A stretch of 56,840 nucleotides of DNA. It comes from Octopus bimaculoides. Taxonomy: Eukaryota. The notes beneath the pieces are model-generated. The model ran no database searches. It saw nothing but the letters and a program-made list of their open reading frames with translations, and had not been told where the DNA came from. Location: contig NC_068996.1 of NCBI RefSeq assembly GCF_001194135.2, positions 45,234,813 through 45,291,652 of the forward strand, written 5' to 3'. The position numbers and the translations under genes are program-made. This document shows, piece after piece, positions 3 through 54,023 of this stretch. The stretch's first letter is position 1, and the number at the start of each line of letters is the position of its first letter.

Positions 3-392
3 GCAGTAGATTAGATTTCTACTTTTGCAGTTCATGTTCGCATTGGTGAATATTTTCCCTGTTTTTGTGTTCATATATGGGCCGGTATGGATTGATCGGC
101 ATGTGCCGCATCGGCTATCATTGCATTTGGATACAGTGAATGTTTGATTTTTGTTGCTGAGGTCAAACCTTGCCTTTGTTAATAGTTTTTTCAAGTTTTT
201 AGGTTGTCTCTTACTGAGAGTTATATTTTGATCAGTAATGATATTTCTCAATTCCTTACTTTGTGCAAGGATCGGTAAGTTCGCTTTGGCGATATTAAAG
301 ATGTTCTGGTGGCATGGATTTTGTGTCACTATAAATGGAATGATCTTTTCCTGTTTGTCTTTTCTTTGCGGTGTCCTCAATATAAACAAATA
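3..392 (-). mobile_element. Penelope-like retroelement (PLE) relic: RT-to-GIY-YIG linker and start of the endonuclease, running off the window edge
   Basis: Manual minus-strand translation (no ATG, so absent from the ORF track): ...KIIPFIVTQNPCHQNIFNIAKANLPILAQSKELRNIITDQNITLSKRQPKNLKKLLTKARF...KCNDSRCGTCRSIHTGP...NANMNCKSRNLIYC. This matches the PLE pattern IPF-x-T-x-NP / KR-x-P-x-NLK-x2-L / C-x4-C-x2-C / C-x-S-x-N-x-IYC. Confidence 0.85.
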
Positions 393-444
393 TATATATA
401 TTCATATACATATATATATTGCATTGTTAGGAAATTATAAATTA

Positions 445-610
445 GGATTTTTATTACAGCCACAAGGGCCTAACGCAGAGGGGACAGTACAAGGACAGAC
501 AGGACTGCACAGTGGGGACAAAAACATAAAACGAATGAAAAATGGTAATACGTACAATGAAATTGGTGGAGAGGAAATGGCTGCATGCACCCCACTCACA
601 TGCAGTGCCA
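445..610 (-). mobile_element. Retroposon-type 3' end with AATAAA (probably the 3' UTR end of a Tx1/L1-type LINE)
   Basis: The reverse complement ctgtctgtccttgtactgtcccctctgcgttaggcccttgtggctgtAATAAAaat is closely similar to the SINE tail at 18471-18527. The Tx1 assignment is from recollection. Confidence 0.55.
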
Positions 611-706
611 TTTAAACGTTCTTACTGTCTGCTTTATAATCTATGTTGTTAGTCTCTTTGTACCTTTTGTTTTACTCTTTTTTTTATAAACACAAGTTAC
701 TCTTTT

Positions 707-1001
707 TTAAATCCTTTTTATATACGGCCTTAATTCATTTAGTTCGACCACTAATGGTAGTTCGTCGAACTCTACCAGGAAAGTTGGTTGTTCGAATCTG
801 CATTTTTCTTTCCACCTACTGTAGCTTTCCTTGTCTATTAGAATCGCCTTCACATTCTCACCGTAACTATCCTTTGGAAACTATAATAGATTTCTCTTTG
901 TAATCATCTTTTTCGTGCACACATTTTTGCCATATTTTACAAAACACCAATTGTGCTTTCTCCCTTCTTGCTCACTGTGTCACTCTACCCATTTCAGTCA
1001 T
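707..1001 (-). pseudogene. Disrupted paralog B of an unknown ~100-aa protein
   Basis: Manual translation: MTEMGRVTQ/(frameshift)EQEGRKHNWCFVKYGKNVCTKKMITKRNLL*FPKDSYGENVKAILIDKESYSRWKEKCRFEQPTFLVEFDELPLVVELNELRPYIKRI*. One frameshift and one TAG (881-883). Aligns to the ORF at 1153-1497. Confidence 0.7.
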
Positions 1002-1152
1002 TTGAACGTTTATATAAACTATTTACAATCGTTCTATTGTCTTATTGTTTTTTCTTAATCTCGTTTTTTCCTCTCTCTTTTTTTTTTAATGAAACAATTT
1101 TACTTTTTTCCTTCTTTCTTCAATAAAACAATTTTACTTACTTTTTTCCTTT

Positions 1153-1497
1153 TTAATCTCTCATGAAACGTTCTAAATCTTTTAGCTCCACTACTGGTGG
1201 CAATTCATCGAACTCCACCATCACTCCAGGCGGGTCAATCCCTTCTCCACACATGTCTTTTAGTCTGTTGTAGGTGTCTTTGTCAACCACGATGGCCTTC
1301 ACATTCTCGGAATACACATCCGTGGGCAACTTTACTCTTATAGTACATTTAAACTTTAATACTTTCTTTTCAGTTTCTTTGCTTTTTGCGTACGTCACAA
1401 CATTCCATCGAAATTTTCTTTTTCTTATTTGTTTTCTCTTTTCTTGCTCCGCTCCTGGTACTTTCTTTTCTTCCATCACTTTGGACAGTCTCTCCAA
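1153..1497 (-). CDS. Hypothetical protein, paralog A (107 aa from the ATG at 1476); probably part of a mobile or viral element
   Basis: Intact, non-repetitive ORF. Coding status is supported by amino-acid conservation with the neighbouring copy (LPTDVYSENVKAIVVDKDTYNRLKDMC vs FPKDSYGENVKAILIDKESYSRWKEKC; VEFDELPPVVEL vs VEFDELPLVVEL). Confidence 0.55.
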   Translation of the reverse strand: MERLSKVMEEKKVPGAEQEKRKQIRKRKFRWNVVTYAKSKETEKKVLKFKCTIRVKLPTDVYSENVKAIVVDKDTYNRLKDMCGEGIDPPGVMVEFDELPPVVELKDLERFMRD

Positions 1498-2468
1498 TTT
1501 CTAAATTTTCTTTCTCCACTGGAACAACCGGTGTCTTCAGCAATGTCTCTTCCTTATACAATTCCTCATTGAACACTTCAAGTTCCCTAATTATAATGTG
1601 AAGTAAACAGAAAAACAGTTTTCATGCTGCACTGTAAGAGTGAAGTCCATTGTTAAAATGGGGGACGCTATAGTTATTATCCCAAACTTTGAAACTATGA
1701 AAAATTGGCTAGACCCTGGCAAACTTAATAAGCAGAATTTTACCCGACAGTTTTTTTCTGTGAGACAAAGTTGTTCAATTGGTGCATTGTTCGAGTTAGT
1801 GAGTTGAAAGTATATACGCTCCATGTGAGTACTGTAATTCTTAACCTGTTATTGTAAACCTGTTAATTCCTGAATTGTTAAATTTGTTGGAATTTTTATT
1901 TGTCTTCCCCATTCATGGGTGAAGTAATGAATAATAGACCAGTACCGAATTTGTACTAAAATGGAAATCTGGATTTTATGATATCCAAAATTTTTGGAAT
2001 GCATATTTTTGAAAAAAACAAATTTGTGTGAGGCCAATTTTGGTGAAACCAAAAACCGGGATATGGAGTCCAAATTTCTGAACTGTGTATATATGTTACC
2101 CTTGTAACTTTTGACTGCACGTCTGGTGTAGTATTTGGGTGTTTGTTTGTGCATATATTTGTTTGTATGTAAGCTATTTTTATGCTGATTATTAATAATA
2201 TTTTACAAAGATTCATGGTATGGTGGTGTTTTGAATTCACCCTATCCTCGTCGATTTTGTAAATTCGAGTTATGGCCACCANNNNNNNNNNNNNNNNNNN
2301 NNNNNNNNNNNNNNNNNNNNNNNNNNNNNNNNNNNNNNNNNNNNNNNNNNNNNNNNNNNNNNNNNNNNNNNNNNNNNNNNNNNNNNNNNNNNNNNNNNNN
2401 NNNNNNNNNNNNNNNNNNNNNNNNNNNNNNNNNNNNNNNNNNNNNNNNNNNNNNNNNNNNNNNNNNNN

Positions 2469-2504
<36 letters not shown>

Positions 2505-3295
2505 GATTCCTTATATATATATATGGTTCTTACTCTCTTATCTATCTCATGTATTATATGTGTGTGTGCGTGCGTGCGTGCGCGTGTGTGTTTGCGTGTG
2601 CGTGTGTGCGTGCGCGTGCGTCCATGTTGTTATATTTTTACGTGTTTCTCCACGGCATATAGATGTGTACATATATATATTTATACAGACTCATACAACC
2701 GAATGCTTTCATATTTTCATTTACATACCTACATATATGCCTTTGTATATGTGTGAGAGAAAGTGTGCGTGCGCGCGTGCGTTCATGTGCATACATAAAT
2801 CCCATCTATATACACAATTATTTTTTTTTGTCCTCAAGCAATCCATTGTCCTTATGATTAAGTTCCCCGCTTTTTTGACATCTTCTTTCCAAAACTCTTT
2901 TATGTATCATATTGCTTCCAGCTCTACACGTGTTTTCATTTCTTACATTCATTTGATTAAGCTTTTTATTTTACGCTTTCATAATTTTATCATCAATTTT
3001 ATACATACCCATAATACTCACCTATTTCTGTCTGTTTAAGCTATATCTTCTCACACACCCTTTACTCCTCCCCACTCCCCCCTCTCTCTCTCTCTCTCTC
3101 TCCATATATATATACCATCCCCTCGATATGATTCTGTGCCTTACCTTCCATGACGTGTGTGCCTGCATATCTGTGTGTATGTGTGTGTGTGTGGACGTGT
3201 GGGCGCGTACACACATATACACGTATATACATCCATGTACATATACATATACGCATATATTCATATGTATGTATGCGTATATGTATGTGCACATG

Positions 3296-3925: not shown

Positions 3926-4748
3926 ATGTAATTTGATCTTTTTCATTTTCTGTTTTTCATCATATAGTCTATAATATTCAAGCTAGAATACGTTATTTCG
4001 AGTATAATTTCATCGCTTAATGTCAAGGTAATTATGTGTCTATCGGTTAAATATATTTACATTACAAATGAAAACATTTTGCAAAGGAGAACGTTACAAA
4101 TTGACAGCTGATGGTATAGAATATTTAACCAAGATATATTTAACAAAAAGGAAGTCATTTTAATTTATATATCTATATTTATATCTTTCTTTATCAGTTA
4201 ATCTGTTTATACATACATAGATATACAGTGTGTTCGGGTTTAATTTGACGACAGTATTGCTGAAATTTATGCATCGCAGAGAATACACACACATACACAG
4301 ACTCACGTACACATATTATTTATATTGTGTAATCTTTGTACTAAAACTATATAGATCGTTGTTATTAATCGAAAAATGGTTCTTAAATACTGCTATTATC
4401 ATAAACGGGAAGACAATGTTCTTAGTGTTTTTGTTTTATTTCCGCTTTTTATATATATATACACTTTTTTGTTTTCTGACAAACGTTATAAATGTGACAC
4501 CAGGTCAAATCATCATATTTGTTGAAAATCATATTTGTGTGAGATTTTAAGGAGATCATATTCTGATATTATTTCTACCGTGAGATCCCTGAAGTAGCAC
4601 ATTCGCAAAACTGCAGAGTTTGATGTCTCTGATATATGCTTGACGTACATAAGATAAACAGGAAGCCCTTGGTCCGGATATGTCATCCTGTTAACCTCAC
4701 ATATGACAAACGCACACTCACGCGCAGTCAGCCTCTAGACATACATGA

Positions 4749-4793
<45 letters not shown>

Positions 4794-5431
4794 GTTTGTA
4801 TCTCTCTATATATACATATATATGCAGATATATGTGTGTGCATATATATATATATANNNNNNNNNNNNNNNNNNNNNNNNNNNNNNNNNNNNNNNNNNNN
4901 NNNNNNNNNNNNNNNNNNNNNNNNNNNNNNNNNNNNNNNNNNNNNNNNNNNNNNNNNNNNNNNNNNNNNNNNNNNNNNNNNNNNNNNNNNNNNNNNNNNN
5001 NNNNNNNNNNNNNNNNNNNNNNNNNNNNNNNNNNNNNNNNNNNNNNNNNNNNNNNNNNNNNNNNNNNNNNNNNNNNNNNNNNNNNNNNNNNNNNNNNNNN
5101 NNNNNNNNNNNNNNNNNNNNNNNNNNNNNNNNNNNNNNNNNNNNNNNNNNNNNNNNNNNNNNNNNNNNNNNNNNNNNNNNNNNNNNNNNNNNNNNNNNNN
5201 NNNNNNNNNNNNNNNNNNNNNNNNNNNNNNNNNNNNNNNNNNNNNNNNNNNNNNNNNNNNNNNNNNNNNNNNNNNNNNNNNNNNNNNNNNNNNNNNNNNN
5301 NNNNNNNNNNNNNNNNNNNNNNNNNNNNNNNNNNNNNNNNNNNNNNNNNNNNNNNNNNNNNNNNNNNNNNNNNNNNNNNNNNNNNNNNNNNNNNNNNNNN
5401 NNNNNNNNNNNNNNNNNNNNNNNNNNNNNNN

Positions 5432-5509: not shown

Positions 5510-7600
5510 TTATACCAAAATATATTTGAATAACAGAATGGCACGAACACTTTGGAATGAAGTTTTCGCATTGTATGTGAGCGCTTTCGCCGTTTTCACC
5601 TTACCAAACAACCGTGTCAACCGTGTTACAAGGTTATTCGTATAGAAGTCGTTGTTCTTAGTAGCGTTGTTAACTAATGCCGGTTTAGATTCCGACTTAC
5701 TATTCCTATAAATTAATCTTCTTTTGTCTTTCCTAGTTGATAATTTTCCACTTTTATTTTGAAAAATTTTAATATTTCGAATTTTCCATATGCAATATGT
5801 CTACATATTCACTAAATGGGACATTTCTAAGGTATGACATTCTGGTTTGGTGTGTAGGTATTTTAAGTAGATGGATTAATTTTGATACTATGTAGCCGAT
5901 ATAACTCTCATTGAATTGTAGTCATGTAATGCAGTAAATGAGAGCTTTTGTTTACCATTCATATTTGCATTCGCCTTCAATTCCTTCCCATTCTTGACTT
6001 CTTTGGTTATTCCCGAATCAACTGTTCCACAGCAAAGTGTTCCGTAATTTGCTACTTGTATTATTTCTTCCTCTAGCATGAATTTCGCCTTTGCTAAAAG
6101 TCTTTTAACAATTGTTTTCTTCGACTGTTGATAATTTGTGATTTTTTTTTTTATTTTTCAGAGATTTGGATCCTTTAGCCGAATGAAAGATGTTATGGTT
6201 TCAAAGAATATGAGTGACTATAAAAGGAATATTAATATTGTGTTTTTGTCTTCGCGCTCATTGTGACGGTTTCTCTTTAAGACAGAGATTGAGGTCTCTT
6301 TTGCTTTGGTTATGACACTATTCACTAAGATTTTAGGATCTATTTTTCCAAAGGAATATTTTTATTTCAACCAGTTGTTCTTCTCGTCTATTGGTGTCCG
6401 TACACTTGAATATATATCTCTTGTCATATTGAATGAAATGTTCCTTATAATATGGGATGGGTTGCCAGTGCTAAAATCTAAATATTGACGTGTGTCCATT
6501 TGTGTCTTTCAAGTAGAAATCGGTTGTAACCCTCTCATTCTTTTTAATTACCAGATTTGCAGTTAAGGAAGTTCTTTGACATCCATTTCCATAGTAAAAT
6601 GGATCAATTCGCGAATGTCATTTATTAATTTAAAGAATCTTGTACGGTCTTCCTTACTTCTGTTCTAAAATATGAAGCAGTCATCCAGGAATCATTTTTC
6701 CGGTTTCTCTTTAAAAAGTATTTGAAATGCTGATCAAAAGTAATTCCGGAAAAGGTATAGATTTTTTTTCCTTCGAGGAATCCCATTACATGTGTTACAG
6801 GCGTTGGTGCAATTTCCGTTCCCATCGCCGTGCGTTGTATCTCTCAAGTTAATATTGGTTATCAAAGAAAAAAATAGATGTATTCTTGCACCAATCGTAA
6901 TACTTCAAGTATATGATTTTGGGTGAGGTGGGGAGACTATTTCCTGAATTATATGTGGGTATCTAGAATTCTACTTCTTCTAATTCTAATCTATGAGGAA
7001 TATGCGTGTAGCATCTGGTCATATCGAAACTAACCAGGATCGTCTCTATATTCGCTGTTTCGGGAACACGATTTAGAAAACCAGGAACCAATTTGTAGAA
7101 TGGCTTCGAAATTACGTCAAGTAAATTACTTAATCGTTGGGTGCTTGATATTGTTCCCGCAAGATTGATCGAAATTTTAAATGAGGCGGTTTGGTGATCT
7201 TTACATACGGTGCATAGAGATCCTTTGCAATGGGTCTCTTCAGCTTTACAGACCTTTGGCTGTCTATGAAAGCTGCTTCATTTTCCCCCAAATTGGTGAG
7301 GTGATCCAACTTCCTTTCCTTTAAATTACTTTTGCCTTTGCTCGTTAATTTATTTATTGTTTCCATAGTTTATCTTTACTAATTACAAATTTTTTGAAGA
7401 AATGTTGGTCATTTAGTTGTGTTAAGACCACTTTCCTGCAATGGTACCATCCATTGTTACAATGGATTATCTTTTGTCCCCTTCTTCAATGCCTAGAGGA
7501 ATGGTTCTGCAGACATTCCAGTGCCTTTTGCTCTTCATTTGTAATGTTTGCTTTAATAAGATGTGTTAGAATGTTATGTAGTCTTCTAAGTGTTTGTTCC
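5510..7600 (-). mobile_element. Degenerate Penelope-like element (RT + GIY-YIG pseudogene)
   Basis: Colinear minus-strand motifs with stops and frameshifts: NITNEEQKALECL (~7540), YVKITKPPHLKFRSI (~7190), ILVSFDMTRCYTHIP (~7030), TAMGTEIAP (~6820), CCGT...NANMNGK (~5960-6040), then a GIY-YIG C-terminal-like segment. Confidence 0.85.
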
Positions 7601-7948: not shown

Positions 7949-9809
7949 ACGACGCTAATTTACACAGAAACTGTCTTCCACTACTCTCCCCCTTTCCCCT
8001 CCTCCTCCTTTCTCTCTCTCTCCCTGCTTCATCTTTCATTATTTTCGCACCAAAGTTACTTGGTTTATGTTTCTTTCCAGCTCCCATTTTCATCTTTCTG
8101 TCATTTTCTGCCATTTCTGTCGTTCTTGTTCCTCTCAATTTCTCTTTCGTTTATTTTCTTTCTCTTCTCAAATCATCACTTTTACTATTTTTTCCTTCCC
8201 TATCTTTCTCATTCGCACCCCCACCATCAGCTTCGTTTTACTCCTCACGTTTTTTTTGTTTCTTTTCTGTTTCTTTCCTTACTCCTCCATCACTTAATCC
8301 TCTTTCTATTACTGCCGCCCTCTATTTCCGTTCTCTTTCTCTCATACACGAACACGAAAATAAAAAATCTGCACACATACACAAGTACATACAAGTACGA
8401 ACGCATGTGTACACACATACGGACACACACTAACAACTGCACGTGCACACATATGGATAAACTCTATTAATAGCCTTCGTTCTAAATATCGATATAAAAA
8501 ATTCACAACTCTACAAAAACTGAAAGGTTGACTATCCATATATATGTGTGTCTGGGTGTGTGTATACATATATATATATATATATATATATANNNNNNNN
8601 NNNNNNNNNNNNNNNNNNNNNNNNNNNNNNNNNNNNNNNNNNNNNNNNNNNNNNNNNNNNNNNNNNNNNNNNNNNNNNNNNNNNNNNNNNNNNNNNNNNN
8701 NNNNNNNNNNNNNNNNNNNNNNNNNNNNNNNNNNNNNNNNNNNNNNNNNNNNNNNNNNNNNNNNNNNNNNNNNNNNNNNNNNNNNNNNNNNNNNNNNNNN
8801 NNNNNNNNNNNNNNNNNNNNNNNNNNNNNNNNNNNNNNNNNNNNNNNNNNNNNNNNNNNNNNNNNNNNNNNNNNNNNNNNNNNNNNNNNNNNNNNNNNNN
8901 NNNNNNNNNNNNNNNNNNNNNNNNNNNNNNNNNNNNNNNNNNNNNNNNNNNNNNNNNNNNNNNNNNNNNNNNNNNNNNNNNNNNNNNNNNNNNNNNNNNN
9001 NNNNNNNNNNNNNNNNNNNNNNNNNNNNNNNNNNNNNNNNNNNNNNNNNNNNNNNNNNNNNNNNNNNNNNNNNNNNNNNNNNNNNNNCATTCATATCTAA
9101 ATATGAATCATATATTATTCATATATTATATATGTATATAATACTAGCGCGCGCGCACACACAGAGACACACACACACACATATATATAGATAGATAAGA
9201 AACTATACACATACATATATGCACTATTTAATTGTATGCTTACTCGTGTGTATGTTTTTGTTCGCGTTTATATTCGTATATATATATATACAAACACACT
9301 CACAAAAATATAGCCTTACATACATAACATTTAGTAGTAAGTGCTGGACCTGAATCTCTGTTTCGAGTTAAGATGTTGGTCGAAATAAATCCACATGAGC
9401 AATACCTACGTATAGCTATATAAGTGTCTAGTAACTCTTTTTGGATGTAGGTGGGAAACAAATCTTGAGAAGGTATTTGATTATGGCAGATCTCCGTTCT
9501 GACTCGTTTTGTATTATGTTAATGCCAACTGTTTGACCGTATATTATTTTACGGTTTTGTTGTTATTTCTTCATTTACTGAATGTGCATGCTGCATTGTA
9601 AGAGAGTAAAATACTGTTTAACCCCTCTAATGATAACACTTCGCATGTCCCTTGAAGAAACAGGCCATACTAGTGCATAATTTTTCTGAAATTATTTCAT
9701 GTCTTTTAGCATTTTTTGCTCAAGGAACAGGGAAAAAATATCTCAAAATATTATATGCGCACAAACACTGCAATAGCTTCTAGAAATAGTTTCAGATTAG
9801 AGAAATATT

Positions 9810-10027: not shown

Positions 10028-11004
10028 AGATTAGGGAAATATTGTACTTTGGACAACCAAGAAAATTAGTACAGTATTAAGGAGGGGAAAAAAGCATGTT
10101 TAAAAAAACAGGAAAAAGATAAAAGAAGACAGAAAGAAATAAAGAAACAAAGAAAGAATATCTATAAGTGTAACTTTGTATTTTAGGTTTTGTATTATTT
10201 TTTTCTTTTTACCATCTTTTCAACGATTTGCATGCAATAATTCTGAATAAATCAATATTTTCGAATAAACCGAAGTTTGTCAGTATCTTTTNNNNNNNNN
10301 NNNNNNNNNNNNNNNNNNNNNNNNNNNNNNNNNNNNNNNNNNNNNNNNNNNNNNNNNNNNNNNNNNNNNNNNNNNNNNNNNNNNNNNNNNNNNNNNNNNN
10401 NNNNNNNNNNNNNNNNNNNNNNNNNNNNNNNNNNNNNNNNNNNNNNNNNNNNNNNNNNNNNNNNNNNNNNNNNNNNNNNNNNNNNNNNNNNNNNNNNNNN
10501 NNNNNNNNNNNNNNNNNNNNNNNNNNNNNNNNNNNNNNNNNNNNNNNNNNNNNNNNNNNNNNNNNNNNNNNNNNNNNNNNNNNNNNNNNNNNNNNNNNNN
10601 NNNNNNNNNNNNNNNNNNNNNNNNNNNNNNNNNNNNNNNNNNNNNNNNNNNNNNNNNNNNNNNNNNNNNNNNNNNNNNNNNNNNNNNATATATATGTATG
10701 TATGTATATTTATAAAGAAAACAAGTCCAAATCACGTGAACTTACAAGTTAAATGCTGAACAGTTTTTCAAAACATTCTTCAACATTCTGGCATTAGAAT
10801 GTCTAATCTTAAGCTCTTTATCTGGTTCTTATACTCACACCAAACAACGTACAAATTTTTTATTTTTTATTTTTTCTATTCTCAGACATGAAAACGAGCT
10901 TTCACCCAAAACACTTACTGTTTTCCTTTCCTGCACTTTTATGCTTTCATAGTACATTTCTTTTGTACACACGCACTTGGTATGCACACACACACACACT
11001 GAGA

Positions 11005-12075
11005 ATATTTTATAACCAGTTGATCTACCAAACGGAGCCTAATGTCAGTGAGGTGGAGGCCGGTCCACAATGATGTCGTCGGGAGGTAGGCCCGAAACGG
11101 CGCGCATTCTTTCCTGATGACCCCACACACGTGCTGGCTTCCTGTATGCGGAGCTCTCAACTGGTGGAACTTGCGTGTGCTAATTGTTTGCAAAGCATCA
11201 CGTATTTCCTCAACAAGTTTCTTTAATGGAGCTTCAGTCCTGGGTAAAGTAGAGACCAAGGGGAAGCATTTGGAAAGTCGAATGTTTTCAAGTGCTCACA
11301 ACGTCCAGCCAATCGGACTGTGCAATAGATGGAACGCTCACTTTAGCTTTTTACAGAGGATTAGTGGAGGAAAAGTGCGACGACGTTCTTGGGGACACCT
11401 TGGACGTCGAAGAAGATCAGCTACTTGCTCTTTCCGGAGAACTTTCGAGCCGAAATAATTTCCAAAATCCTCTGGCCTGGCAGTGCTACCGGGGAGGTTT
11501 GCCTGTTTGAGATAAACTTTACAAGCAATGAAGTGCTATCAGTAGAGAATATCTGAGATGTGAGCAGGACGACGAGACGGTCCTGCATGCATTGGTTCAG
11601 TGCCCGAGCATTGCTGATTGTGGGTTTATATCGATCACCTGCTGTCGCGTGTGAGACGGTTCCAGTTGAATCCATCGTGAAGATCGCCCCGCCGTCTTAC
11701 TTCAACCGGGCTGTTTTTATATGCCTGGTCGCCATGGCGAAAGAGGTTGTATGGTGGGCGAGGTTGAAGGGACTGAAGACAAACGATTTTCTCTTTGACC
11801 AATCCCTGGCGAACTTGAAAAGAAAAATAAGCGTAGAGAAGGAAGTGTTATCTTCTAACCCATTTGCTGAAAGTTGGATGGAAGTAGAGAGAATGGTGCG
11901 AGTGAACGGGCTTGTCCTGAGCATACGTCCGTAGTTGGAAAAAAGGAAAGGAAAAAAAGCATCTGCACCAAAAGTTAGGGCACCCATGATTTTTTATGGG
12001 TTTTTCCACGGGCAACCCCCGAACGTCTCCTCCATATTGAGGATAACACATTGTTGATATTTTTAAAAAAGTTTT
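11005..12075 (+). mobile_element. Tx1/L1-clade LINE, 5'-truncated (ORF2 C-terminus + 3' UTR)
   Basis: GC-richer island. Translation gives LAWQCYRGGLPV*DKLY, the CCHC remnant RCEQDDETVLHALVQCP (~11555-11605) and AVFICLVAMAKEVVWWARLKGL...FAESWMEVERMV, typical of the L1/Tx1 ORF2 C-terminal zinc-finger region. Confidence 0.8.
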
Positions 12076-45309: not shown

Positions 45310-45382
45310 ATGTGTGTGTGTATGTATGTATGTATGCTTGAATGTAAGCATGTAAGTATACATGTATGTATATACAAATCCA

Positions 45383-45702
45383 CTCCAGGACTTATTCTTC
45401 GTAAACCTAGTACTTATTCTATCGGTTTCTTTTGCCGAACCGCTAAGTTACGGGGACGTAAACACACCAGCATCGGTTGTCAAGCTATGTTGGGGGGGGG
45501 GGGGCAAACACAGACATACAAACACAGCCACAAACATATTTATACATATATACGACGGGCTTCTTTCAGTTTCCGCCTATCAAATCCACTCACAAGACTT
45601 TGGTCAGCCAGAGGCTACAGTAGAAGATACTTGCCCAAGGTGCCACACAGTGGGACTGAACCCGGAATTATGTGATTGGTAAGCAAGCTACTTACCACAC
45701 AG
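45383..45702 (-). mobile_element. SINE family B
   Basis: Colinear match to the reverse complement of 53596-53935. Confidence 0.85.
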
Positions 45703-52280: not shown

Positions 52281-53232
<952 letters not shown>

Positions 53233-53595: not shown

Positions 53596-54023
53596 GCGGG
53601 ATTGGCTGTGTGGTAAGTAGCTTGCTTACCAACCACATGGTCCTGGGTTCAGTCCCACTGCGTGGCACCTTGGGCGAGTGTCTTCTACTATAGCCTCGGG
53701 CCGACCAAAGCCTTGTGAGTAGATTTGGTAGACGGAAATTCGAAGAAGCCCGTCGTATACGTATATGTATATGTATATATATATATATATGTGGAGGGGT
53801 GTATGCATGTGTCTGTGTTTGTGCCCCCAACATCGCTTGACAGCCGATGCTGGCGTGCTTACGTCCCCGTAAGCTAGCGGTTCGGCAAAAGAGACCGATA
53901 GAATAAGTACTAGGCTTACAAAGAATAAGTCCTGGGGTCGATTTGCTCGACTAAAGGCGGTGCTCCAGCATGGCCACAGTCAAATGATTGAAACAAGTAA
54001 AAGAATAAAAGAATAAAAGAATA
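53596..54023 (+). mobile_element. tRNA-derived SINE family B, full length
   Basis: A box tggctgtgtgg (53603-53613), B box ggttcagtccc (53646-53656), internal (TA)n, and a tail ending gactgaaacaagt-type followed by (aaaagaat)n. Confidence 0.9.

What the first reader, a model, noticed from the sequence alone, without database searches (positions are those of the whole stretch)
707..1497. Tandem pair of paralogous unknown ~100-aa ORFs; the second is hidden from the ORF track
Seen: an intact minus-strand ORF (1153-1497) is followed after ~150 bp by a disrupted copy (707-1001) that I found by manual translation. Over one 27-aa block 15 residues are identical (P.D.Y.ENVKAI..DK..Y.R.K..C), and 11 of 12 are identical in VEFDELPxVVEL. 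An N-terminal EQExRK...W..V.Y.K motif is also shared. The substitutions are largely conservative and the nucleotide match is weaker, which suggests protein-level selection after duplication. I do not recognise the domain. Inference: intronless, closely spaced, same-strand paralogs in TE-rich animal DNA suggest cargo of a mobile element or endogenous virus, not a host gene. The C-terminal V-x-F-x-x-LPP-x-V-x-L-x-DL pattern weakly recalls an RRM beta1-alpha1, as in LINE ORF1 proteins.
Basis: partly seen in the sequence, partly recalled or inferred. Interest (0 to 1): 0.72.

Follow-up and report, generated by a model that had tools for sequence, protein, structure and literature searches.

The report
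Decayed octopus retrotransposon accessory-gene fragments
The two small look-alike reading frames are real, but they are broken tail ends of a larger zinc-knuckle, RNA-binding-type gene that rides with an octopus-specific LTR retrotransposon. They are ordinary transposon debris, although the family they belong to has not been described.

Summary
ORF A (1153-1497, minus) and a disrupted copy B (about 707-991) share 41% identity over 98 aa (tblastn E 3.6e-16). Replacement differences are 0.25 per site; synonymous sites are saturated.

They are not complete 100-aa genes and not an in-place duplication. Each is the 5'-truncated C-terminal domain of a roughly 390-aa protein family seen only in Octopus (O. 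bimaculoides, O. sinensis, O. vulgaris). The full architecture is an RRM-like domain, one CCHC zinc knuckle, a disordered charged linker, and this C-terminal alpha/beta domain. A and B belong to different subfamilies: A is 74% identical to P0001, B is 78% identical to P0009, and A and B are 50% identical to each other over the same stretch.

In seven fetched genomic loci the family ORF sits just upstream of a short TG...CA block with an internal AATAAA. Window B has this block at 425-610. In three loci the block, or the ORF itself, is followed on the same strand by Ty3/gypsy-like gag or pol sequence.

Best reading: A and B are decayed accessory ORFs at the 3' end of an LTR retrotransposon. No Pfam, PDB or viral-structure match exists for the C-terminal domain. 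Interest is moderate to low.

The parts
1153..1588 (-). Copy A. A 5'-truncated fragment of the family ORF holding part of the charged linker plus the whole C-terminal domain. It includes the intact ORF 1153-1497. It carries one frameshift and lacks the RRM-like domain and the CCHC knuckle.
   Evidence: tblastn of family proteins covers 1156-1588 in two frames. It is 72-78% identical to O. bimaculoides P0001, P0002 and P0004 and groups with P0001, P0002 and P0003 in the tree.
1075..1152 (-). A-rich trailer after A's stop codon, with a 34-nt tandem duplication at 1077-1144. The first ~55 nt are shared with other copies. The conserved downstream block is missing, so A is 3'-truncated.
   Evidence: the repeat finder family D2. 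P0004 reads through into 1084. blastn matches window 1220-1098 to L005 33081-33192. No match to the conserved block.
707..991 (-). Copy B. A 5'-truncated fragment holding the C-terminal domain only. It has one in-frame stop, no frameshift and no start codon, and belongs to a different subfamily from A.
   Evidence: tblastn: P0009 64% over 81 aa with no gaps (E 3e-28), P0008 58% over 89 aa. 78% identical to P0009 against 50% to A over the domain core.
611..706 (-). A- and purine-rich spacer between B's stop codon and the conserved block. It sits where a polypurine tract would be expected.
   Evidence: Alignment of five copies: weakly conserved and A-rich, with conservation starting sharply at TTAAA|TGG.
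425..610 (-). Conserved non-coding block that behaves like a short LTR. It starts TGGCACTG, contains AATAAA, and ends ...ATTTCCTAACA. Unrelated simple repeats follow it.
   Evidence: 72-84% identical to blocks downstream of family copies in L004, L005 and L003 (two copies), and found nowhere else in about 180 kb held. It has the same terminus as L004. In L003 the equivalent block ends ...ATATAACA at both ends of a gag-pol interval. Coordinates.
1972..2281 (-). Upstream region collinear with the region upstream of the O. vulgaris copy in L004 (7742-8403). It may be part of the same element variant. It abuts the assembly gap at 2289-2468.
   Evidence: blastn 74-75% over 207 nt and 96 nt.

Best explanation
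A and B are dead, 5'-truncated remains of an accessory protein gene that belongs to an Octopus-specific lineage of LTR retrotransposons.

The intact protein is about 390 aa. In the element the gene lies after pol. It is followed by an A/purine-rich spacer and then a short TG...CA terminal repeat with an internal AATAAA. The window keeps only that 3' end: A, then B, then the spacer, then the terminal block at 425-610.

A and B come from two diverged subfamilies. Their resemblance reflects long purifying selection on active element lineages, not a duplication at this site.

Inferred, not shown:
- The head-to-tail join (A cut at its 3' side, B at its 5' side) arose by non-homologous recombination or template switching between two element RNAs or copies.
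- The protein acts as a nucleic-acid-binding or chaperone partner of the element's RNA, like LINE ORF1p or retroviral nucleocapsid.
For: Family and architecture:
- A profile search of 1.84 billion proteins found 22 representatives. Every source name recovered is Octopus bimaculoides, O. sinensis or O. vulgaris.
- Long members carry Pfam zf-CCHC.
- The AlphaFold2 model of P0005 has two confident domains, residues 41-135 and 295-386 at pLDDT about 85-90, joined by a disordered linker.

Truncation and decay:
- A covers only the last third of the protein and B the last quarter. A has one frameshift and B has one stop.
- None of six genomic units has a single open frame spanning the first to the last domain.

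Subfamilies.

Link to an LTR element:
- A conserved 150-190-nt block lies 90-130 nt after the stop codon in window B, L004, L005, L003 c1 and L003 c3.
- Independent copies share exact termini, after which the sequences become unrelated.
- In L003 the block occurs at 3014-3261. It is followed by G plus TGGCGACGAGGTTTCGAA, a gag-like region, CCHC-PR-RT (3947-5245), RNase H, and integrase H2C2 plus rve (Pfam). Family copies c2 and c3 come next, and then the block again at 10530-10762.
- L007 has a family copy, then the block, then a gag-like region with DUF7083 that is homologous to L003 3381-3740.
- L006 has a family copy joined directly to RT, RNase H and integrase homologous to L003 5246-7088.

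Head-to-tail chains of copies recur: L003 c2 to c3, L005, and gene models P0004 and P0016.
Against: - Only seven loci were seen, and all were chosen because they hold a family gene model.
- The window itself has no gag-pol and no second terminal block.
- In three loci the ORF lies upstream of a block that is followed by PBS-like, gag or leader sequence. This requires either elements in tandem sharing a repeat, or an ORF inside a long LTR.
- The L003 block pair is only 75-82% identical, and c1 and c2 are only 69% identical. That is low for the two LTRs of one insertion.
- The PBS-like sequence could not be matched to any tRNA.
- No target-site duplication was found.
- The RRM assignment rests on one Foldseek hit at E 9.5e-3.
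Confidence: 0.55

Rival explanations
1. The family ORF lies inside a long LTR of about 2.2 kb (leader, ORF, conserved block). Every complete element would then carry it twice, as MMTV carries sag in U3. A and B would be pieces of two such long LTRs joined together.
For: - In four of four cases where the block is followed by internal sequence (L003 c1, L005, L006, L007), a family ORF sits just upstream.
- In L006 a leader-like sequence recurs both upstream of the ORF (8590-8664) and after integrase (11617-11689), next to a purine-rich run and TGTGGAA.
- L003 c1 and c2 are collinear over 911 nt on either side of gag-pol.
Against: - Cross-subfamily conservation starts sharply at TTAAA|TGG, just before the short block, not at the leader.
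- In L006 similarity runs on upstream of TGTGGAA, so that is not a clean boundary.
- c1 and c2 are only 69% identical, and the 3' side carries an extra copy, c3.
- No 5' terminus of such a long LTR is shared among loci.
Confidence: 0.2
2. The family is an independent retroposon that encodes only an ORF1/Gag-like protein, comparable to HAL1 or Drosophila HeT-A. It would be copied by some other element's reverse transcriptase. The variable 5' truncation and head-to-tail chains would come from target-primed reverse transcription, and the proximity to gag-pol would be secondary.
For: - 5' truncation points vary: A, B, the second copy in P0004, the second copy in P0016, and L004.
- The trailer after the stop codon is A-rich.
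- The AATAAA signal near the unit end is conserved.
- The RRM-like plus CCHC grammar matches type I ORF1p (PMC4120745).
Against: - No poly(A) tail follows the shared terminus.
- Three independent loci have the same type of gag or pol directly downstream on the same strand. In L003 there is no room for a separate LTR between the unit terminus and gag.
- The same block bounds the far side of gag-pol in L003.
Confidence: 0.1
3. A and B are members of a host multigene family arranged in tandem clusters, possibly domesticated gag-like genes. B would be a pseudogene, and the pair would have arisen by ancient tandem duplication at this locus.
For: - Same-strand clusters exist: L003 holds four copies.
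- pN is much lower than pS between A and B.
- P0005 and P0023 are full-length gene models.
- RefSeq annotates some members as genes.
Against: - A and B each have closer relatives elsewhere than each other.
- Their flanks are unrelated.
- All six genomic units examined are broken.
- Gene models are chimeric with an RGS gene, with an integrase and with each other.
- Copies are scattered on at least three O. sinensis chromosomes.
- There is a direct structural link to an LTR-like terminus and gag-pol.
Confidence: 0.07

Closest known systems
Type I ORF1 proteins of non-LTR retrotransposons (RRM(s) directly upstream of CCHC knuckles; I, Jockey, R1, Tad1, some L2 and CR1; Khazina and Weichenrieder classification as summarised in PMC4120745)
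   Same: Full-length relatives have a beta-alpha-beta-beta-alpha-beta domain directly followed by a CCHC knuckle. They are highly charged and plausibly bind nucleic acid.
   Different: No endonuclease/RT ORF2 follows any copy. The copies are linked to a TG...CA repeat and to PR-RT-RH-IN. There is one knuckle rather than the usual three. There is a long disordered linker and an extra C-terminal domain with no detectable relatives.
Additional ORFs carried by Ty3/gypsy-type LTR retrotransposons between pol and the 3' LTR (the env-like position)
   Same: The position in L003: integrase, leader, family ORFs, purine-rich spacer, terminal repeat.
   Different: The protein is not membrane-type. The maximum Kyte-Doolittle 19-residue mean is below 1.6 and 32-41% of residues are charged. 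It looks like an RNA-binding protein. Two diverged paralogues can sit in that position.
LTR-encoded genes such as the MMTV superantigen gene in U3
   Same: Under the rival reading, the ORF would lie inside the repeated terminal unit and so appear on both sides of gag-pol.
   Different: There is no sequence or structural relation. The long-LTR boundary could not be shown.
L1 ORF1p (coiled coil, RRM, CTD; Pfam Transposase_22)
   Same: It is an RNA-binding module made of an RRM-type fold plus a further C-terminal domain that assists it, according to PMC4120745.
   Different: There is no Transposase_22 hit for A, B or nine long relatives. No L1 ORF1p structure appears among the 50 best Foldseek matches listed. 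A CCHC knuckle is present.

Membership tests
LINE ORF1p, type I | [quoted passage not shown] | tested here: inconclusive
   CCHC is confirmed by Pfam in P0005, P0006 and P0007, and just under threshold in P0008 and P0010. The preceding domain has RRM-like topology at pLDDT 85-90. The best Foldseek match, IMP3 RRM12, is only E 9.5e-3, and no Pfam RRM hit exists.
LINE ORF1p, type I | Encoded upstream of an ORF2 with endonuclease and reverse transcriptase in a non-LTR element | tested here: not met
   No copy in the window or in the seven loci is followed by such an ORF. Three are followed by LTR-type gag or pol.
L1-type ORF1p (Transposase_22) | Pfam PF02994 match, or structural match to the L1 ORF1p RRM-CTD | tested here: not met
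   No Pfam hit. No such PDB chain appears among the sequence matches or the 50 best Foldseek matches listed.
Ty3/gypsy-like LTR retrotransposon (the larger element) | Gene order: gag with CCHC, then protease, RT, RNase H, integrase | tested here: met
   In L003 3947-6905: zf-CCHC, RVP/Asp_protease, RVT_1, RT_RNaseH, Integrase_H2C2, rve_3. The gag-like region carries DUF7083 in L007.
Ty3/gypsy-like LTR retrotransposon (the larger element) | Direct terminal repeats starting TG and ending CA on both sides of the internal region | tested here: met
   L003 3014-3261 and 10530-10762 are 75-82% identical, and both end ...ATATAACA before diverging. The window and L004 blocks start TGG and end ...TAACA. 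The 5' copy in L003 is incomplete at its start.
Ty3/gypsy-like LTR retrotransposon (the larger element) | Primer-binding site complementary to a tRNA 3' end just after the 5' LTR | tested here: inconclusive
   TGGCGACGAGGTTTCGAA lies one base after the L003 5' block, and a degenerate version follows the L005 block. No tRNA gene was available to match it against.
Ty3/gypsy-like LTR retrotransposon (the larger element) | Polypurine tract before the 3' LTR, and a target-site duplication | tested here: inconclusive
   An A/purine-rich spacer precedes every block. No clean tract could be defined and no duplication could be sought, because no locus has both outer flanks clearly defined.
Retroviral or errantiviral env-type accessory gene | Signal peptide or transmembrane segments | tested here: not met
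   No hydrophobic 19-residue window reaches 1.6 on the Kyte-Doolittle scale in five long members. There are no significant BFVD structural matches.

The most novel reading that the evidence does not exclude
Octopuses harbour a previously undescribed LTR-retrotransposon lineage that carries, besides its normal gag-pol, one or two copies of a LINE-ORF1-like RNA-binding gene (RRM-like domain, CCHC knuckle, and a new C-terminal fold). This gene would sit either in the env position or inside the LTR itself. That would be a modular exchange between the two great classes of retrotransposons, and some intact copies (P0005, P0023) may be expressed or co-opted by the host.
Probability: 0.3. Interest if true: 0.6.

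Novelty: new variant of a known kind. Interest (0 to 1): 0.38.

Why it matters
For this window the result is mostly housekeeping: the pair is transposon debris, not a hidden host gene pair or a virus.

The family behind it is more interesting.
- Its C-terminal domain folds confidently yet has no Pfam, PDB or viral-structure relative.
- Its RRM-like plus CCHC grammar is that of LINE ORF1 proteins, yet it travels with a Ty3/gypsy-type element.

If a genome-wide census confirms this, it would add a case of module sharing between non-LTR and LTR retrotransposons. It would also give cephalopod genome annotators a profile for masking a family that is currently annotated as "uncharacterized protein" genes and that creates chimeric gene models.

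Tried and rejected
Searches that found nothing for A or B:
- Pfam, PHROGs and PDB sequence searches with A, with B and with family profiles returned only CCHC knuckle hits.
- The first AlphaFold2 model of A alone, from 4 sequences, reached only pLDDT 59. Its Foldseek hits were generic ferredoxin-like folds, all non-significant.
- Profile-profile comparison of the C-terminal domain with the N-terminal RRM-like domain showed no relation (probability 1%).
- IMG/VR viral contigs and JGI metagenome contigs held no relatives.
- Rfam found nothing in 1-2300. RNAalifold on the conserved block gave no supported structure and no covariation.

Limited or unproductive steps:
- The second and third word-indexed protein searches were swamped by the low-complexity linker and added little.
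- The look-up of encoding contigs found nothing for P0001, P0005 or ORF A itself.
- No convincing target-site duplication was found around A plus B.
- Literature searches found no description of this family.

Ideas considered and dropped:
- An A-rich poly(A) tail directly after the stop codon. Homology in fact continues about 270 nt further.
- The family ORF being the gag of the L003 element. That element has its own gag-like region and its own knuckle.
- A link between A/B and the open frame at the left edge of the window. That frame is absent downstream of other copies.

Full report
**1. The observation**

On the minus strand, ORF A (1153-1497) is intact for 114 codons. A second copy, B, lies 165 bp downstream. 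tblastn of A against the whole window finds only B, at 716-976, with E 3.6e-16 and 41% identity over 98 positions.

B reads in a single frame. It has one in-frame stop and no start codon. At DNA level only two coding patches of 40-47 nt, at 77% identity, are detectable, and the flanks do not match. Over 54 aligned codons pN is 0.25 and pS is 0.89, which is saturated. The resemblance is therefore old and was maintained at protein level.

**2. What the ORFs belong to**

Pfam, PHROGs and PDB sequence searches do not recognise A or B. A word-indexed search found two Octopus bimaculoides proteins, P0001 (72% identity) and P0002.

A profile search of 1.84 billion representative proteins found 22 hits. 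Several are longer proteins with this domain at their extreme C-terminus: P0005 (386 aa), P0023 (404 aa), and P0006, P0007 and P0010. Every source name recovered is O. bimaculoides, O. sinensis or O. vulgaris. A few hits come from unnamed sequencing-run assemblies. Nothing was found in viral or metagenome contigs.

The long members carry a Pfam CCHC zinc knuckle and align over an N-terminal domain that ends in the knuckle. An AlphaFold2 model of P0005, built from a 10-sequence alignment, gives two confident domains:
- Residues 41-135 (pLDDT 85-90) have beta-alpha-beta-beta-alpha-beta-beta topology and run into the knuckle.
- Residues 295-386 (pLDDT about 88) have beta-alpha-beta-beta-alpha-beta followed by beta-alpha-beta.
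- A disordered charged linker joins them.

Foldseek finds nothing at E <= 0.001. The best match is an RRM pair of IMP3 at E 9.5e-3, and the rest are generic ferredoxin-like folds. The viral structure library gives nothing. The two domains are not detectably related to each other.

**3. A and B are truncated members of different subfamilies**

Homology of A to long relatives runs from 1156 to 1588. It uses two frames, so there is one frameshift, and it stops inside the linker. The RRM-like domain and the knuckle are absent from the whole window. B covers only about the last 90 residues.

Over the domain core A is 74% identical to P0001 and P0002. B is 78% identical to P0009. A and B are 50% identical to each other. 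In a neighbour-joining tree they fall in separate groups. A local duplication therefore does not explain the pair.

**4. Genomic context elsewhere**

Seven loci were fetched. Family copies are scattered on three O. sinensis chromosomes and also occur in O. vulgaris and O. bimaculoides. None of six units has one open frame from the first to the last domain. Gene models are often chimeras, with an RGS gene, with an integrase, or with a second copy.

A conserved non-coding block of about 150-190 nt lies 90-130 nt after the stop codon, beyond an A-rich spacer. It is present in:
- window B (425-610);
- L004;
- L005 (84% identical to the window);
- L003 c1 and L003 c3.

It occurs nowhere else in about 180 kb held.

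Conservation among subfamilies begins sharply at TTAAA|TGG. The block contains AATAAA. The window and L004 copies end at the same ...ATTTCCTAACA, followed by unrelated simple repeats.

**5. Link to an LTR retrotransposon**

In L003 the block ends ...ATATAACA twice. After the first copy (3014-3261) come, in order:
- one base and then TGGCGACGAGGTTTCGAA;
- a gag-like region;
- a knuckle, protease and RT (3947-5245);
- RNase H;
- integrase H2C2 and core;
- a leader and family copies c2 and c3;
- the second block (10530-10762), followed by unrelated DNA.

In L007 a family copy and block are followed by a region homologous to the L003 gag-like region, which carries Pfam DUF7083. In L006 a family copy is joined directly to RT, RNase H and integrase homologous to L003.

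Three independent same-strand juxtapositions, together with shared exact termini, are hard to attribute to chance. The simplest reading is a Ty3/gypsy-type element whose short TG...CA repeats bound gag-pol plus one or two family ORFs in the position after pol.

The window retains only the 3' end of such an element: A (cut at its 3' side), B (cut at its 5' side), the spacer, and the terminal block.

**6. What remains open**

- In L003 c1, L005 and L007 the ORF lies upstream of a block that is followed by internal sequence. This needs either tandem elements sharing a repeat or a long LTR that contains the ORF. L006 gives some support for the long-LTR reading, but no clean 5' boundary was found.
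- The L003 repeats are only 75-82% identical.
- The PBS-like sequence could not be matched to a tRNA.
- No target-site duplication was found.
- Head-to-tail joins between copies recur: window A to B, L003 c2 to c3, L005, P0004 and P0016. Their junction points vary. I infer non-homologous recombination or template switching between element RNAs. This is not shown.

**7. Function (inferred)**

The inference rests on three features: an RRM-like fold followed by a CCHC knuckle, a high charge (32-41% charged residues) and the absence of hydrophobic segments. Together they suggest that the protein binds or chaperones the element's RNA. This is analogous to type I LINE ORF1p and to retroviral nucleocapsid (PMC4120745). 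The role of the C-terminal domain is unknown. By analogy with the L1 ORF1p CTD it may assist RNA binding or oligomerisation.

**8. Novelty and score**

I found no description of this family in the literature searched. I could not consult repeat libraries such as Repbase or Dfam, where a consensus may already exist. I rate the family as a new variant of a known kind. The window feature itself is ordinary decayed transposon sequence. The overall interest is 0.38.

Noticed in passing
window 3-401 (-), 5891-6157 (-), 6966-7277 (-): An open frame runs off the left edge (…IPFIVTQNP…KNLKKLLTKARF…Cys-rich…NLIYC). A related fragment and an RT-like ORF lie 6-7 kb away. From memory these resemble the RT-to-GIY-YIG region of Penelope-like elements, but Pfam gives no hit. 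They are not found next to family copies in other loci.
   Followed up: partly
window 38960-39250 (+): A reverse-transcriptase fragment (Pfam RVT_1, E 2.7e-6, just under the gathering score). It belongs to another retroelement about 37 kb from the finding and is unrelated to it.
   Followed up: partly
window 19612-20079 (+): A Cys-rich 156-codon open frame that from memory resembles the N-terminal region of Helitron proteins. Pfam gives no support.
   Followed up: partly
window 20968-21333, 45356-45679, 52923-53195, 53629-53979: A recurrent short interspersed repeat that produces look-alike spurious ORFs ending …VGLNPE.C.W. It is probably the abundant octopus SINE.
   Followed up: no
window 1861-1935: A 75-nt stretch matches, in inverted orientation, the leader just upstream of family ORF starts in L003 (7525-7600) and L005 (33589-33668). 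This hints at a further rearranged element fragment upstream of A.
   Followed up: partly
window 2289-2468 and elsewhere: There are assembly gaps, 6297 N in total. One lies immediately upstream of the region homologous to L004, so the upstream part of the element may be missing from the assembly rather than from the genome.
   Followed up: no
L002 10435-10686; L004 7271-7732; L003 19510-19634: The intron in the RefSeq model of P0006 (O. sinensis LOC118764025) coincides with a SINE-like insertion that is also present at other loci. The gene model appears to splice around a transposon insertion in a decayed copy.
   Followed up: partly
P0008 (O. bimaculoides A0A0L8FRC8), P0017 (O. sinensis XP_029636848.1), P0004, P0016: Public gene models fuse family fragments to an RGS domain, to an integrase, or to a second family copy. 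These are likely annotation chimeras caused by this repeat family.
   Followed up: partly
L003 5590-5742 and 7167-7306: A 150-nt direct repeat (89-94% identical) lies within the pol region and after the integrase of the L003 element. It is unexplained.
   Followed up: no
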